Positions 14,983 to 44,858 of a stretch of 64,000 nucleotides of DNA are shown here, piece by piece. Below the pieces are notes generated by a model. That model searched no databases, was not told the origin of the DNA, and was given only the letters and a program-made list of their open reading frames with translations. Each line of letters starts with the position of its first letter. Position 1 is the first letter of the stretch. This DNA comes from Hemiscyllium ocellatum (lineage: Eukaryota), in contig NC_083409.1 in assembly GCF_020745735.1 (NCBI RefSeq), positions 9,785,534 to 9,849,533 on the forward strand. Direction: 5' to 3'. The translations under genes and the position numbers were made by a program.

Positions 14983-15320
14983 CTACACACATTCAGATCT
15001 CATGATGCTCTTGCTGAGGGGAGAGGTGAGGGTCACGTGGGTGAGAGCACAGGAGAAACGAGCGTTGGACTCCCAGTCAGACCCAGAGAGGGTCAGCAGG
15101 CTGCTGACACTGTAGGTGCTGTCCAAAGCTCGCAGGTAGTTGCTGGTCTGAACCCTGTACGAAATGACGGCACCGTCCTTCTTCCACTGCACCTCCAGCT
15201 CATCGGGATAGAAATGGTTGGCAAGGCACACCAGGGTGGCAGTGCCCTTGGCATTGACCTGTTCCTGGGGGGGGGGAGGTGGGGGGGCAGCAGGGTCAGC
15301 TTGGGCTGGGTTGTCAAAAC
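14983..15320 (-). CDS. IGKC: Ig kappa-type light-chain constant exon, cluster 1 (C1); frame open but N-terminal part altered by compensating frameshifts
   Basis: Acceptor ttgtttctcttgtctttcAG at 15321-15322, phase 1. Translates (x)FDNPAQADPAAPPPPPPQEQVNAKGTATLVCLANHFYPDELEVQWKKDG...FSCALTHVTLTSPLSKSIMRSECV*. It has the C1-set Cys/Trp/Cys plus the terminal interchain Cys, and closely resembles shark kappa (NS4-type) C regions from memory. Confidence 0.93.
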
Positions 15321-22300: not shown

Positions 22301-23700
22301 TGAGGAAACGCTGCGAGGAAAAGCCAAGGAACTACAGGCCAGTGAGTCTAACACCAGTGGTGTGTAAGTTGTTGGAAGGAATTCTGAGAGACAGCATCTA
22401 CATGCATTTGGAAAGGCAAGGACTAATTTGGGATTGTCATCAGTTTTTTTTTGTGGAACCTTGTGCTATTGTTGTTCACTATTTATATAAATGATTTGTA
22501 TGTGAAGAAAGGATGAATCATTAGTACATTTGTGGAAGACACCAAAATTGGTGGCATAGTGGACGCTGAAGAAGATTATCTGAGAGCACAAAGGGATCTT
22601 GATCAACTGGGCCATTGGGCGGAGGAATGGCAGATGGAGTTTAATTCAGATAAATGCAAGGTGCTGCTTTTTGGTAAGACAGAGGAGATGGGTGAGATCT
22701 TAAACAAATAATTTGCAGCTGTGTTTACTGTGGAGAATGACATGGAAGCCAGGGAACAGTGGATGTGGACAGTGACAAACCCAGCATGGGGTTAAGTTGT
22801 AAAGTTTCATTTATATCTAACTATGTATATTGGTAGTGGAAGTAGGGTTGAGTGTCTATTATTACATACAACATGTAGTTATGAATGTGTCAGTACAGGA
22901 GGTGGTGCTGTGTGTATTGAGATTTTTTTACAGCTTCTGGGATCTGATCAGGTGTATCCCAGAATACTGTGTGAATCTTGGGAAGAGATTGCTGGGCCCC
23001 TTGCTGAGATATTTGTGTCATTAACAGCCATGGGTGAGGAGCCAGAGAACTGGAGAGGTTGGCTAATGCTGTGCCATTATTTCAGAAAGGCTGTAAGGAA
23101 AAGCCAGGGAAATATAGACCGTTGAGCCTGATGTCAGCGGTGGGTACATTGTTTTGAGGGGATTCTGAGGGATGGAGGTTTTTTGAAGTAGTGGCAAAGA
23201 AGATTGATAAAGGCAGACATTTTCAACATGGACTTCAGCAAAGTATTTCACAAGATTCCACATAGTACACAGGTTAGAAAGGTTAGATCACATGGGATCC
23301 AGGGGTACAATTTGGATATAAAATTAGCTTGAAGATAGGAGACAAAGAATGTTGGCAGGGAGCTAATTTTCAGACTGGGGGTCTGTGACCAGTGGTATGC
23401 CACAAGGATTGATGCTGACTTTTGTAATTTGAAAGCATGATTTGGATGTGAATGTAGGTGTGACAAATCGTGAGTTTACTAACTGTATATTATACTATGC
23501 AGTATATAGTAAAGAAGATTATTTCAGAGTACAGCAGGACCTTGATCAGATAAGGCAATGGGTGGAGGAGTGGCAGATGTGTTCAATATAGAGAAAGTGA
23601 GATGCTGCATTTCGGAAAGCCAAACCAGGGAGAACCCATACAGTGAATTGTCAGGCCCTGTGGAGTGTTGCTGAGCAAAGGTGTTGTTCATCTGTTGCCG
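19340..23700 (+). mobile_element. Stacked CR1-type LINE fragments (19340-19925, 20030-21910, 21990-23700)
   Basis: RT ORF pieces such as GRSCLTNLIKFF, FSKAFDKVPH, SGVTQGSVL and LVRPHLGYCVQFWS. Confidence 0.85.
22762..22936 (+). repeat. Direct copy of the V1 RSS-flanking sequence 25172-25345 embedded in a LINE
   Basis: About 175 nt with 4 differences from 25172-25345; includes the V1 nonamer and part of the spacer. Confidence 0.92.
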
Positions 23701-24559: not shown

Positions 24560-24745
24560 GGAGGGTGGTATAATTGCAACATTTAAGAGGCATTTGGATG
24601 GGTATATGAATAGGAAGGGTTTGGAGGAATATGGGCAGTGTGCTGGCAGGTCGGACTAGATTGGATTGGGATATCTAGTCAGCATGGAAGTGTTGGACCA
24701 AAGGGTCTGTTTCCATGCTGTGCGTCGCTATGACTTTATGACTCT
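24560..24745 (+). mobile_element. 5'-truncated CR1 3' end with 6-bp target-site duplication
   Basis: Flanked by ACAATT at 24554-24559 and 24746-24751; the paralog in copy B shows the empty site. Confidence 0.85.
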
Positions 24746-24810
24746 ACAATTCAGCATTTGTGTTTTAGAAAGTTTCAGTGCTTAATAACGAAGGATTGAG
24801 GTTTACTTAC

Positions 24811-24845
24811 TCAGTCTGAGCTTGGTTCCTTTACTGAATGTGTAC
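24811..24845 (-). CDS. IGKJ: Ig kappa-type J segment, cluster 1 (J1), YTFSKGTKLRL
   Basis: G TAC ACA TTC AGT AAA GGA ACC AAG CTC AGA CTG A|GTAAGT: canonical phase-1 donor, preceded by a 23-RSS. The FGxG motif is mutated to FSKG. Confidence 0.93.
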
Positions 24846-24884
24846 CACAGTGAGAGCTCCCAGTGTAGAAGCTGTAGAAAAACC
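24846..24884 (+). promoter_or_regulatory. 23-bp-spacer recombination signal sequence of J1
   Basis: CACAGTG (24846-24852), 23-nt spacer, AGAAAAACC (24876-24884; one mismatch to ACAAAAACC). Confidence 0.93.
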
Positions 24885-25329
24885 TCTGCTCTCTGCTTCC
24901 CTTCATCACTCTCACCCTCTCCCTGTCTGTGTCTCATTCACCCTCAGACTCTCCCTGCCTCTCTCTGTCTCTTCCTCATTCATGTCTTTCTCCCTCTCTG
25001 TTTCACTCATTCTGTTTTTCTCGATGAGATGTGTCCAGCTGCACTCGGGCGATTTGTGAACTTTATTTTTCGATGTTAAATCTTGCAGCTGTTCTTCACA
25101 TGTGGCCATGGAGTGTAAAAGGGAAGCTTGAGGCCTTCAGTGAGTCGTGTACAGCACAGAGACTGGAGTGTGATGTGGACAGTGACAAACCCAGCATGGG
25201 GTTAATTTGTAAAGTTTCATTTATATCTAACTATGTGTATTGGTAGTGGAAGTAGGGTTGAGTGTCTATTATTACATACAACATGTAGTTATGAATGTGT
25301 CAGTACAGGAGGTGTGCTGTGTGTATTGA

Positions 25330-25357
25330 GATTTTTTTACGGCTTTGTATCACTGGG
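25330..25357 (-). promoter_or_regulatory. Degenerate 12-bp-spacer RSS of V1
   Basis: Minus strand: CCCAGTG (heptamer position 2 mutated), 12-nt spacer ATACAAAGCCGT, AAAAAAATC (two mismatches). Confidence 0.88.
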
Positions 25358-25641
25358 AAGGCCTGGTGTAACGCTGCTGACAGTAATAGTCAGCGACATC
25401 CTCATTCTGAACGCTGCTGATTGTCAGGGTGAAACTGATCCCTGATCCACTGCCGTGAATCGATCGAGACTCCTGTGAATCGAGTTGCTGCATTGTAGAT
25501 CAGGAGAGAGGGTTTCTGACCTTCTCGCTGCTGGTACCAAGCAAGGTAAGTGATAATGTCTTCACTGGCTGTACAGGTGATGGTTGCAGTCTGGCCCCGT
25601 CCCACCGACAGACTGGCTCATGATGATGTCCCCGTTGATAC
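25358..25641 (-). pseudogene. IGKV: Ig kappa-type V exon, cluster 1 (V1), frameshifted pseudogene
   Basis: Acceptor ctctcAG at 25642-25643. Recognisable pieces are [11 protein letters not shown] / [44 protein letters not shown] / [25 protein letters not shown]. Relative to V2 there is an 11-nt deletion in FR1 and two 1-nt deletions in FR3 (net -13). Confidence 0.93.
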
Positions 25642-25827: not shown

Positions 25828-25876
25828 CTGCGACACAGAATGCCAGGGGCCAGATCAGCTGGATGTGTGAAATCAT
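25828..25876 (-). CDS. IGKV: Leader exon of V1 (MISHIQLIWPLAFCVAG)
   Basis: ATG at 25876, hydrophobic 16 codons plus 1 nt, donor GCAG|GTACAA, short intron to the V acceptor. Confidence 0.9.
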
Positions 25877-31397: not shown

Positions 31398-31410
31398 NNN
31401 NNNNNNNNNN
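31398..31410. other. Assembly gap (13 N)
   Basis: Run of n between the two duplicated units. Confidence 0.99.
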
Positions 31411-41454: not shown

Positions 41455-43875
41455 ATTGGCAGTGAAGAAGGCTGTCTAAGAATACAATGGAATCTTGACC
41501 AACTGGGCCAGTGGGCTGAGGAATGGCAGATGGAGTTTAATTCAGATAAATGGGAGTGCTATATTTTGGTAAGACACAAGAGATGGGTGAGATCCTGAAC
41601 AAATACTTTAGGTCAGTATATATTGTGGGGAAAGCTAGGGAATTTGGAAAAATAGTGATGTCTTGAAAAGAGAACACATCTAAATGAGGAGACGCTAAAG
41701 ATCTTAAAACACATAAAGGTAGATAAACCCTAGGACCTGATCAGGTGTATCCCAGAACATTGTGGCAACTGGGGAAGAGATTTTTGGGACCCTTGCTGAG
41801 ATATATGTATCATCGGTAACCATGGATAAGGTGCTGGAGAAACAGAGAGGTTGGCTAAGATTATGCCATTATTTCTGAAAGGAAAAGCAAGGGAACTATA
41901 GACCAGTGAGCCTGATGTCAGTGCTGGGTAAGATGTTGGAGTGGATTCTGTGGGACAGGATTTACATCGTTTGGATAATCAGTGTGGCTTTGTGCATAGG
42001 AAATCATGTCTCCTGAATTTGATTCAGGAGGTGACCAAAAGAATTGATGAAGACAGAACAGTAGACATTGTCAATATGGACTTCAGAGTAAAGTGTTTGA
42101 CAAGGTTCCACATGATAGACTGGTTGTGAGGTTAGACCACATGGGATCCAGGGGGAGCGAGCCATTGGAGTCAAAAAATTGGCTTGAAGATTGGAGGCAG
42201 AGAGTGTTGGGAAAAGGTTGCTTTTCAGACTGGAGATCTGTGAATAGCTGTGTGCCACAAGGAATGGTGCTGAGTCCACAAATGCTTTTCATCATTTAAA
42301 GAAATGATTTGGATGTGAATATAGGAGTTACGGTAAGTTTGTAAATGACACCAAAATTGGTGGGACAGTGGATAGTGAAGAAGATTATCTCAGGGTACAG
42401 CGGGACCTTGATCAGATGGGGCAATGGGCAGAAGAGTGGCAAATGGAGTTCAGTTTAGATAAATGTGAGATGTTGCATTTTGGAAAGGCAAACCAGGGCA
42501 GGAGTTATACAGTTAATGGGAGGGCCCTGTGGAGTGTTGCTGAATAACACACCTAGGGGTGAAGATGCAGGTACATTATTCCTTGAAAGTGGGGTCACAG
42601 GTAGACAGGGTGATGAAGAAGGTGTTTGGTTTGCTTGCTTTTGTTCATCACTGCATTGAGTACAGGAGTTGGAACATAATGTTACAGCAGTACAGGAGAT
42701 TGGTGAGGCCACTTTGGGAATGATGTGAACAATTCTATCATCCTGAGGTAGGAAGGATGTCGTTAAACTTAAAAAGCTGCAGAAAAGATTTACAAGGATG
42801 TGGCCAGGATTTGGAGGGTTTGAGCTGTCGGGAAAGGCTGAAGAAACTGGGGCTATATTCTCTGCAGCATCTAAGGCCTTGGGATGACGTTATAGATGTT
42901 TATAAAACCATGAGGGGCATGAACTGAGTGTATATCCAAGGTCTTTTCCGTGGAAAAGGGATTCCAAAACAAGAGGACATAAGTTTAAGGCGAGAGGCAA
43001 AAGATTCAAAAGGGACCTGAGGGGTAACTTGTCACACAGAGGGTGGTGCGTGTCTGGATTGAGCTGCCAGAGAAAGTGTTGGAGGTGGTTACAATTACAG
43101 CATTTAAAACACATTGGGATGGGTACATGGATAGGCTGGTTTTCGAGAGATGGAAGCCAAATGCTGGCAAATGGGATGAGATCAGTTTAGGATATTTGGT
43201 TAGCATGGACAAGTTGGACTGAAAGGTCTGTTTCCACGCGGTATGACTCTGTGACTATGAGTTGCTGGAAAAGCTGAGACTTCTTACCCTGAAGCGGAAG
43301 GTTCTGAGGAGTGACCTTGTAGAGGTTTGGAAAATCATGAGGGACATAGATAATGTGAAGAATTCTGGAAGGAGGCGAATGTTTTGTAGCGATGGCAAAA
43401 ATTGTTCCCAAAGATCATTCCAGGGATGAGGAACATCAGTTATGAAGTTTGATTGGAGAATTTGGGACTGTCTTCTTTGGAGAAGGCTGAGAGGAGATTT
43501 GTTCAAGGAATTCAGAGTCAGGAAGGGCCTGGACAGAGTAAATAGGGAGAAAATGTTCCCAATTAAGAAAGGATTCAGACCAAGAGACCACAGATCGAAA
43601 GCAATTGGGAAAAGTAACAAAAGTGAGATGGGGAACAACATTTTTAGCCAGTGAGTGGTTAAGGTGTGGAATGCACTGCCTGAGAGTGTGATGGAGGCAG
43701 CTTCAATTAAAACATTCCAAAGGGAATGAGAATGTTAGTTGAAAAGGAACACTGTGCAGGGTGGCAGGGAGAAGGCAGGAGAATGACGCTCAGTGAATTG
43801 CTCATTCAGAGAGCCGGTCCAGACAGGATGGGTGGAATGGTCTCTTTGTACACTGTAACAATTCTGTGATTGTGT
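41455..43875 (+). mobile_element. CR1-type LINE fragments (partly paralogous to 22560-24200)
   Basis: RT and 3'-UTR motifs. Confidence 0.8.
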
Positions 43876-44386: not shown

Positions 44387-44830
44387 TCTGCTCTCTGCTT
44401 CCCCCTGTCACTCTCAACCTCTCCCTGTCTCTCTCTGTCTCTGTCTATTCTTGGTCAATCTCATTCACTCCCTACCCCTCTCTGTCTCTCCCTCATTCAT
44501 GTGTCTTTCTCTCTCTGTCTCCCTGGGTTGTGTCCAGCTACTCTCGGGGGTTTGTGAAATTGAGTTTTCATTGTTAAATTTTGCAGCTGTTCTTCACATG
44601 TGGCCATGGAGTGTAAGAGGGAAACTTGAGGCCTTCAGTGAGCGGTGGACACCACAGGGACTGGAGTGTGTAGTGGACAGTGACAAACCCAGCATGGGGT
44701 AATTTGTTCAATTTACTTTATATATAACTGTGGACGTGTCAGTGCAGGAGTTGGGACTATCTGTCCCTTATTATACATTTCATATAACTGTTGGATGTGT
44801 CAGTACAGGAGGTGGTGGTGTGCGTGTTGA

Positions 44831-44858
44831 GGTTTTTGTATGGCTCTGTATCACTGTA
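44831..44858 (-). promoter_or_regulatory. 12-bp-spacer RSS of V2 with mutated heptamer
   Basis: Minus strand: TACAGTG (position 1 C>T), ATACAGAGCCAT (12 nt), perfect nonamer ACAAAAACC. Confidence 0.92.

What the first reader, a model, noticed from the sequence alone, without database searches (positions are those of the whole stretch)
22762..22936. Templated copy of the V1 RSS flank captured inside the J-C intron: possible footprint of a germline break at an RSS
Seen: 175 nt matching 25172-25345 with only 4 differences, in the same orientation, 2.4 kb away. It replaces ~100 nt of CR1 sequence that is still present in the copy-B paralog (~41640-41730). It carries the V1-specific decayed nonamer, so it post-dates the duplication. 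It ends inside the 12-bp spacer, followed by ctggg, which could be LINE sequence or the heptamer remnant after a 7-nt deletion. Established: sharks have germline-joined V-J genes attributed to RAG activity in germ cells, and templated insertions arise in break repair. Inference: repair of a germline break using, or initiated at, the signal end. Chance proximity to the RSS cannot be excluded.
Basis: partly seen in the sequence, partly recalled or inferred. Interest (0 to 1): 0.72.

Follow-up and report, generated by a model that had tools for sequence, protein, structure and literature searches.

The report
Copied DNA patch in shark antibody gene
A dead antibody light-chain gene of the epaulette shark carries a real, inherited repair scar in which 175 letters lying next to its "cut here" signal were copied into a break 2.4 kb away; this is most likely ordinary break repair, though a weak cut signal at the edge of the scar keeps the antibody-cutting enzyme RAG in play.

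Summary
Window 22762-22936 is a same-strand copy of 25172-25345, with 3 substitutions and one 1-base indel. It replaces 72 nt (not about 100) of a LINE that paralog B (41658-41729) and a Chiloscyllium punctatum cluster still carry.

It is not a misassembly. Contigs from two samples bridge the left junction. The right-junction words occur in 8 runs from 4 samples and 2 studies of the source species, and in no relative.

The V flank is the source. The copy is young: K2P 0.0175, against 0.22-0.31 between clusters A and B. Cluster A is a kappa-type pseudogene.

The copy stops 12 nt short of the RAG cleavage border. V1's heptamer now reads CCCAGTG and was probably already dead at the time. So "a break at the V signal end" is not supported.

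One new point favours RAG. The only gap-free reading puts the retained LINE edge exactly at the cleavage border of a cryptic 23-spacer RSS (CACTGTT-23-ACAGTAAAC). Chance gives this about 1-2% of the time.

Verdict: an ordinary templated repair patch (about 0.5), a RAG-initiated break (about 0.33), or capture of a free fragment (about 0.1).

The scan noted two look-alike patches (179 and 181 nt) 1.30 and 2.47 Mb further along this chromosome. I could not fetch them. Whether they are duplicates or independent events is the decisive open question.

The parts
22762..22936 (+). Inserted copy: 165 nt of V-J intergenic DNA, V1's nonamer and 7 nt of the 12-nt spacer. No heptamer.
   Evidence: The junctions are seen in reads.
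25172..25345 (+). Donor: the original V1 RSS flank, homologous along its whole length to the V flanks of cluster B and of C. punctatum loci.
25330..25357 (-). V1 12-RSS, decayed. In gene orientation the heptamer is CCCAGTG (25357-25351), the spacer is 12 nt and the nonamer is AAAAAAATC (25338-25330).
22723..22761 (-). Cryptic 23-RSS in the retained LINE edge: heptamer CACTGTT (22761-22755), 23-nt spacer, nonamer ACAGTAAAC (22731-22723). Its cleavage border is the left junction 22761|22762.
   Evidence: It scores 11/16. Chance of such a site at the recipient junctions is about 0.95%.
22937..23172 (+). The LINE resumes to the right of the patch, in register with B from 41730 and with C. punctatum L002.
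41658..41729 (+). Unfilled site in paralog B: the 72 nt of LINE that cluster A lost.
25358..25641 (-). V exon of cluster A, a pseudogene with an 11-nt deletion in FR1 and two 1-nt deletions in FR3. The leader exon is at 25828-25876.
24811..24884 (-). J segment (24811-24845, motif FSKG instead of FGXG) and its intact 23-RSS (24846-24884: CACAGTG-23-AGAAAAACC read on the + strand).
14983..15320 (-). C-kappa exon of cluster A. The frame is open, with a -2/+11 nt patch at its 5' end.

Best explanation
This is a germline break-repair scar with no function. Some time after clusters A and B separated, a break or replication failure occurred in the LINE in the J-C intron of the already dead kappa cluster A. 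About 72 nt of LINE were lost. The gap was filled with a 175-nt copy of DNA lying 2.4 kb away on the same strand, found through a short shared motif (GTGATGT). The other side was sealed with little or no homology. The original V1 flank stayed in place.

On this reading, the copy ending inside V1's 12-RSS spacer and the LINE edge abutting a weak cryptic RSS are both coincidences.

Shown: the copy, its direction, its age, the loss of LINE sequence, the junction sequences and its presence in several animals. Inferred: the repair pathway (synthesis-dependent microhomology-mediated end joining or an MMBIR-like template switch) and the cause of the break.
For: The donor is retained and the recipient has lost sequence, which is the deletion-plus-templated-insertion pattern. 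There is no target-site duplication, poly-A or element end.

The LINE (B version) and the V1 flank share a perfect 7-nt GTGATGT at the left junction.

The copy ends 12 nt short of the RAG cleavage border. V1's heptamer is CCCAGTG. The event covers only about 7% of the A lineage since the A/B split: K2P 0.0175 against 0.22-0.31. So the heptamer was probably already dead.

The letters 'ctggga' after the copy align in register with the LINE in B and in L002.

Germline templated insertions with microhomology are described in PMC8421209, PMC4490562, PMC7165422 and PMC5110952. This scan also noted local templated copies outside Ig loci in the same genome (unchecked).
Against: Two RSS-related coincidences are needed. 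First, a donor end falls inside an RSS; my estimate is about 1-3% for a donor within 2.5-5 kb, less striking once one allows that the finding was picked for this feature. Second, a cryptic 23-RSS border sits exactly at the left junction, about 1-2%.

The left junction is not a clean microhomology product, because it carries one extra letter (CAGTG-G-ATGT).

At 175 nt copied from 2.4 kb away, the patch is larger and more distant than the short events copied from within 100 bp that define MMB-TIs (PMC8421209).

The middle G of 'ctggga' matches V1 rather than the three LINE copies, which all have A there.
Confidence: 0.5

Rival explanations
1. RAG started it. In germ cells RAG nicked or cut the cryptic 23-RSS in the intron LINE, possibly while paired with V1's 12-RSS 2.4 kb away. 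The LINE-left signal end was kept intact to the last letter, while the other (coding-type) end lost 72 nt. The gap was patched with a copy of the DNA held closest in the complex, the flank of the 12-RSS. This would be a new kind of germline RAG footprint beside V-J fusion.
For: The only gap-free reading of the left junction puts the LINE edge exactly at the border of CACTGTT-23-ACAGTAAAC. Sites this good occur at 3.7e-4 per position and orientation, and the chance of one at either recipient junction is 0.95%, or about 2% if the donor ends are counted too.

The partner would be a 12-RSS, which fits the 12/23 rule, and the donor ends within that 12-RSS.

The cluster A version of the site is the best of the four LINE copies compared.

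Germline RAG activity in shark kappa (NS4) clusters is published (PMC2193156). The scan notes fused VJ kappa genes 13 and 27 kb from this window (unchecked). Joined V-J contigs appear in a relative's DNA run.
Against: V1's heptamer is CCCAGTG now and was probably so then. If 'ctggg' is copied from V1, it certainly was.

The copy stops 12 nt before the border, not at it. The cryptic RSS is weak (11/16; about one such site per 1.3 kb of the window), and I chose the scoring rule after seeing it. The two RSSs lie head to tail, so the normal outcome would be an inversion, which is not seen. The model needs more steps than the ordinary one.
Confidence: 0.33
2. A free double-stranded fragment was captured. 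The piece would have been released from the V-J interval of a sister chromatid or homologue (RAG-excised as in Rommel et al. 2017, or otherwise broken, or a cDNA of a germline transcript) and ligated into an unrelated break in the intron.
For: The left junction reads as a blunt join with no overlap and no filler. The right junction has at most 1-3 nt of shared letters. RAG-excised Ig-kappa fragments do insert into independent breaks (PMC5339680). Class 2 templated insertion polymorphisms are DNA patches at breaks (PMC5110952).
Against: Neither insert end lies at an RSS or cRSS cleavage border: the right end is 12 nt short and the left end is one letter off a GTG. The full excised V-J piece would be 512 nt, so heavy one-sided trimming is needed. 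The 7-nt shared motif at the left junction would be unexplained.
Confidence: 0.1
3. The patch is an assembly artefact, an independent insertion of a repeat family, or an ordinary gene conversion.
For: The read contigs carry V1-type letters at 22796 and 22827, so the two copies are merged in short-read graphs.
Against: Both junctions are present in reads of several samples from two studies. The 175 nt has no other copy in the window apart from the homologous V flank of B. It is part of the conserved V-J interval in two species. There is no homology between the LINE and the V flank to support gene conversion.
Confidence: 0.02

Closest known systems
Templated insertions at break-repair junctions (polymerase-theta end joining / synthesis-dependent MMEJ; PMC7165422, PMC2943611, PMC4490562)
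   Same: A copy of nearby DNA fills a deletion, the donor is kept, there is microhomology at a junction, the join is untidy by one base, and the change is inherited in the germline.
   Different: Those inserts are usually a few to a few tens of bases copied from close to the break. This one is 175 nt copied from 2.4 kb away. Enzyme dependence is untestable here.
MMBIR / template-switch insertions (MMB-TIs; PMC8421209)
   Same: A switch at microhomology to a nearby template and back. Such events exist as germline variants in normal genomes, including direct-orientation copies.
   Different: MMB-TIs as defined there use templates within 100 bp and are read-length or shorter. Only one of the two junctions here shows clear microhomology.
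Class 2 templated sequence insertion polymorphisms (PMC5110952)
   Same: A DNA patch at a double-strand break, without target-site duplication or poly-A.
   Different: Those patches come from distant regions, often via RNA. This one is local and includes non-coding intergenic DNA with part of an RSS.
RAG-excised fragments inserted into RAG-independent breaks (Rommel et al. 2017, PMC5339680)
   Same: Ig-kappa DNA next to an RSS ends up in a break elsewhere.
   Different: In those events the insert ends sit at RSS/cRSS cleavage borders. Here neither end does, and the event is germline, in cis, with the donor retained.
Germline V-J joining in shark light-chain clusters (Lee et al. 2000, PMC2193156)
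   Same: The same gene family (kappa/NS4-type clusters) and the same proposed actor, RAG in germ cells.
   Different: In cluster A, V and J are still apart (512 nt between the heptamer borders). There is no coding joint.
RAG transposition of a signal-ended fragment
   Same: It would move RSS-bearing DNA to a new site.
   Different: It needs full RSS ends and a 3-5 bp target duplication (as quoted in PMC2193156). Here there are no heptamers at the ends and 72 nt were lost instead.

Membership tests
Templated insertion by microhomology-mediated repair (TMEJ/SD-MMEJ/MMBIR) | The insert is a copy of nearby sequence and the original is retained. | tested here: met
Templated insertion by microhomology-mediated repair (TMEJ/SD-MMEJ/MMBIR) | Recipient sequence is lost at the site, with no target-site duplication. 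| tested here: met
   72 nt are lost relative to B and L002.
Templated insertion by microhomology-mediated repair (TMEJ/SD-MMEJ/MMBIR) | Microhomology at the junctions. | tested here: inconclusive
   Left: a 7-nt GTGATGT is shared by the LINE and the donor, but the product has one extra G. Right: at most 1-3 nt.
Templated insertion by microhomology-mediated repair (TMEJ/SD-MMEJ/MMBIR) | A short insert with its template within about 100 bp (the MMB-TI definition, PMC8421209). | tested here: not met
   175 nt copied from 2410 nt away.
Templated insertion by microhomology-mediated repair (TMEJ/SD-MMEJ/MMBIR) | Dependence on Pol theta or BIR factors. | not testable with these tools
   This needs genetics.
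RAG transposition | Complete RSS heptamers at both ends of the insert. | tested here: not met
   There is no heptamer at either end.
RAG transposition | A 3-5 bp target-site duplication. | tested here: not met
   A 72-nt deletion is found instead.
RAG-excised fragment insertion (PMC5339680) | Insert ends at RSS/cRSS cleavage borders. | tested here: not met
   The right end is 12 nt short of V1's border. The left donor end at 25171|25172 is not next to a CAC/GTG.
Off-target RAG cleavage at a cryptic RSS | A CAC heptamer abutting the break, with the signal side retained intact. | tested here: met
   CACTGTT at 22761-22755, with the border at the gap-free junction.
Off-target RAG cleavage at a cryptic RSS | More than chance. 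| tested here: inconclusive
   P is about 0.0095 for the recipient junctions and about 0.02 with the donor ends included. It is a single event and the scoring rule was chosen after seeing it.
Off-target RAG cleavage at a cryptic RSS | A cleavable partner RSS of the complementary spacer class. | tested here: inconclusive
   V1 has a 12-nt spacer, but its heptamer is now CCCAGTG. Its state at the time is unknown, with about a 7% chance of being intact by timing.
Germline-joined VJ gene | V and J fused in the germline. | tested here: not met
   V and J are separate in clusters A and B.

The most novel reading that the evidence does not exclude
The patch is a footprint of RAG acting in shark germ cells away from a coding join. 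RAG cut or nicked a cryptic 23-RSS in the J-C intron while holding the V 12-RSS, and the break was mended by copying the partner's flank. If the look-alike patches noted 1.30 and 2.47 Mb away are independent events at the same LINE site, this would be a recurrent, recognisable class of germline RAG scar.
Probability: 0.3. Interest if true: 0.75.

Novelty: new member of a known kind. Interest (0 to 1): 0.42.

Why it matters
Sharks are the one group in which RAG is known to have rewritten antibody genes in inherited DNA, and the only accepted traces are fused V-J genes. A second kind of trace, a repair scar at a cryptic or real recombination signal, would let the rate and collateral damage of germline RAG activity be counted from genomes alone.

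As it stands, this is one well-documented templated repair patch in a dead gene. It is useful as a clean example with two unfilled sites for comparison. It also gives a concrete test: do patch edges in Ig clusters pile up at CAC borders?

Tried and rejected
- **Repeat family:** rejected. There is no other copy in the window, and the stretch is part of the conserved V-J interval in B and in C. punctatum.
- **Template switch by the LINE's reverse transcriptase at insertion:** rejected. The LINE is shared by A, B and L002, so it predates the patch.
- **Gene conversion:** rejected, because the LINE and the V flank share no homology.
- **RAG transposition:** rejected, because there are no heptamer ends and no duplication.
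- **'ctggg' as heptamer remnant:** weighed at roughly one in three. Its middle G matches V1 rather than the LINE copies, but the reading needs a 7-nt deletion without flanking repeats, and it would prove the heptamer was already dead.
- **Cryptic RSSs inside the deleted 72 nt** (B as proxy; CACATCT-23-TAAAACACA and others): not evidence. Sites that weak occur about 10 per kb.
- **Fetching other clusters of this genome:** failed. Hemiscyllium ocellatum GCA_020745735.1 and Scyliorhinus torazame files are too large.
- **Four C. punctatum loci (L001-L004):** these are paralogs at 84-87% identity, not orthologs. None has an ectopic V-flank copy.
- **Reaching the two look-alike notes:** look-ups by sequence or by place beyond the window gave nothing.
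- **Relatives' reads:** they neither show nor exclude the patch. Their contigs are short, and 0 of 5 words is expected half the time at their divergence.
- **Read depth:** it could not settle the copy number of cluster A.
- **First call of the look-up of sequencing runs:** the server was busy.

Full report
**Observation.** Window 22762-22936 matches 25172-25345 on the same strand, 2410 nt away. There are three substitutions (22796, 22827, 22932) and one extra G near 22904. A self-BLAST of the window gives 22758-22936 vs 25167-25345 at 97.2% identity, E 1e-82. It is the only internal repeat of at least 50 nt and 92% identity apart from two SINE-like pairs. Chance is excluded.

**Setting.** The window holds two paralogous kappa-type light-chain clusters on the minus strand, 84-88% identical.

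- Cluster A: leader 25828-25876, V exon 25358-25641, 12-RSS 25330-25357, J 24811-24845 with an intact 23-RSS at 24846-24884, and C exon 14983-15320.
- The patch therefore lies in A's 9.5-kb J-C intron, inside LINE sequence on the plus strand.
- Cluster A is dead. It has an 11-nt and two 1-nt deletions in V, the heptamer reads CCCAGTG, the nonamer reads AAAAAAATC, and J carries FSKG instead of FGXG.
- Cluster B also looks disabled. Cys23 is replaced by Trp and the heptamer is TACAGTG.
- Best protein matches are kappa light chains of Hemiscyllium ocellatum and Chiloscyllium punctatum. The gene look-ups point to GCA_020745735.1.

**Direction and age.** The V flanks of B and of two C. punctatum loci are homologous to V1's flank through and beyond the 175 nt, so the V flank is the source.

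- The copy carries V1's own nonamer form, so it postdates the A/B split.
- With B and C. punctatum as outgroups, three of the four differences arose in the copy (one at a CpG) and one arose in V1.
- K2P between copy and donor is 0.0175, against 0.22-0.31 between A and B around both sites. That is about 7% of the A/B age.

**Reality.**
- In Logan contigs of two runs of the source species, from different samples and studies, one contig runs from LINE 22662 across the left junction to 22911 or 22916 without gaps.
- A 96-nt query across the right junction (22890-22985) has all 5 sampled words in 8 runs of that species, from 4 samples and 2 studies, and in no run of the three related species.
- The patch is therefore real and widespread in the species.
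- The contigs carry the V1-type letters at 22796 and 22827. Since no separate contig covers the donor, the copies are merged by graph simplification. This says nothing firm about those two letters.
- Half-depth variant pairs at 23359 and 23366 in both animals hint at a near-identical twin of this cluster elsewhere.

**What was replaced.** B and C. punctatum locus L002 carry the same LINE without the patch. Cluster A lost 72 nt, equivalent to B 41658-41729.

**Left junction.**
- The LINE reads ..AGTG|ATGTCTTG.., V1 reads ..GAGTGT|GATGTGG.., and A reads ..CAGTG|GATGTGG..
- The LINE and V1 share a perfect GTGATGT, but the product has one letter too many for a clean microhomology join.
- The only gap-free reading is LINE up to ..CAGTG followed by donor from 25172.

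**Right junction.**
- A reads ..ACAGCTT|CTGGGATCTGATC.. Here B has ..CCCTAGGACCTGATC.., L002 has ..CTCCAGGACTTGATC.. and V1 has ..GGCTT|TGTATCA|CTGGGAAGG...
- The LINE resumes in register at ct?gga with at most 1-3 shared letters.
It gains from the middle G, because all three LINE copies have A there. It needs an extra deletion without flanking repeats. I weigh it at about one in three.
- That alternative would also mean the heptamer copied was already the dead ..CTGGG form.

**Is the V signal end involved?**
- The copy ends at 25345, which is 5 spacer letters plus the 7-nt heptamer short of the cleavage border at 25357|25358. A copy running off a signal end or a RAG nick should reach the border.
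- V1's heptamer lacks CAC. Parsimony with B (TACAGTG) and L002 (CACAGTG) puts one change on each lineage. With the event covering about 7% of A's lineage, the heptamer was probably already dead.
- By my estimate, a donor end falling in one of the cluster's two RSSs (67 nt) by chance is about 1-3% for a donor within 2.5-5 kb. The finding was selected for exactly this feature, which weakens the figure.

**A new point in favour of RAG.**
- On the minus strand the retained LINE edge begins, exactly at the gap-free junction, with CACTGTT. A 23-nt spacer and ACAGTAAAC follow (22761-22723).
- With CAC required, this scores 11 of 16 matches. Sites that good occur at 3.7e-4 per position and orientation in the window.
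- A simulation allowing 10 and 3 positions at the two recipient junctions, in both orientations, gives 0.95%. It is roughly 2% if the donor ends are counted as well.
- The spacer class complements V1's 12-RSS. Keeping a signal end intact while the other end is chewed back is what RAG breaks typically show.
- Against this: the site is weak (about one per 1.3 kb), I fixed the scoring after seeing it, and the two RSSs lie head to tail. The cryptic sites inside the deleted 72 nt are at background density.

**Known families.**
- The event has the anatomy of a templated insertion at a repaired break (PMC7165422, PMC2943611, PMC4490562, PMC8421209, PMC5110952). It is larger and more distant than the short-range definitions.
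- It fails the tests for RAG transposition, having no RSS ends and no 3-5 bp duplication.
- It also fails the tests for insertion of RAG-excised fragments, whose ends sit at cleavage borders (PMC5339680).
- It is not a germline V-J join (PMC2193156).

**Survey.**
- Clusters A and B plus four C. punctatum loci, about 120 kb in all, hold no other ectopic V-flank copy.
- The scan's notebook lists two notes with the same description, of 181 and 179 letters, 1.30 and 2.47 Mb further along this chromosome. The equal sizes and the depth hints suggest inherited duplicates, but I could not fetch them.
- Other unchecked notes report fused VJ kappa genes 13 and 27 kb from the window and a signal-joint-like scar elsewhere.
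- Contigs of a related species join J directly to V.

**Verdict.** This is a real, young templated patch present in every sampled animal, in a dead kappa cluster.

| Reading | Weight |
|---|---|
| Ordinary break repaired by copying nearby DNA | 0.5 |
| Break started by RAG at the cryptic 23-RSS, perhaps paired with V1's 12-RSS | 0.33 |
| Captured free fragment | 0.1 |
| Artefact or other | 0.02 |

Noticed in passing
window 24560-24748: A roughly 189-nt tail of an abundant SINE/LINE family was inserted just downstream of J in cluster A only, flanked by ACAATT repeats. It is absent from B and from C. punctatum L001. The word depth in reads exceeds a million.
   Followed up: partly
window 25175-25203 (also 22765-22793, B about 44655-44683, L001, L002): This is the most conserved block of the V-J interval, nearly invariant in all five sequences compared. 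In gene orientation it reads GGGTTTGT directly followed by CACTGTC, like a nonamer complement abutting a heptamer with no spacer. The donor's left end lies a few letters from it.
   Followed up: no
window 25351-25357 and 44846-44852: Both clusters have lost the CAC of the V heptamer by different single changes (CCCAGTG in A, TACAGTG in B), while a C. punctatum paralog keeps CACAGTG. B's V exon is in frame but has Trp in place of Cys23.
   Followed up: partly
window 15270-15320: The C exon of cluster A has a 2-nt deletion and an 11-nt insertion in a C-run at its 5' end. The frame stays open but about 12 residues are recoded.
   Followed up: partly
window 24834-25380 (reads of run X5, a related species): Contigs join J directly to V with 16-29 other letters between, at depth 43-163. 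These are fused VJ kappa sequences in what is recorded as a DNA run of a relative, consistent with germline-joined genes.
   Followed up: no
window 23359 and 23366: A linked pair of variants sits at about half depth in two different animals. This suggests a near-identical second copy of this cluster in the genome rather than shared heterozygosity.
   Followed up: no
window 22674-22680 and 41570-41576: A and B share a junction at which the C-terminal part of a LINE reverse transcriptase is fused to a more N-terminal part. It is an old internal rearrangement or nested insertion that predates the A/B duplication.
   Followed up: no
window 31398-31410: A run of 13 N lies between the two clusters. 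It was left as it is.
   Followed up: no
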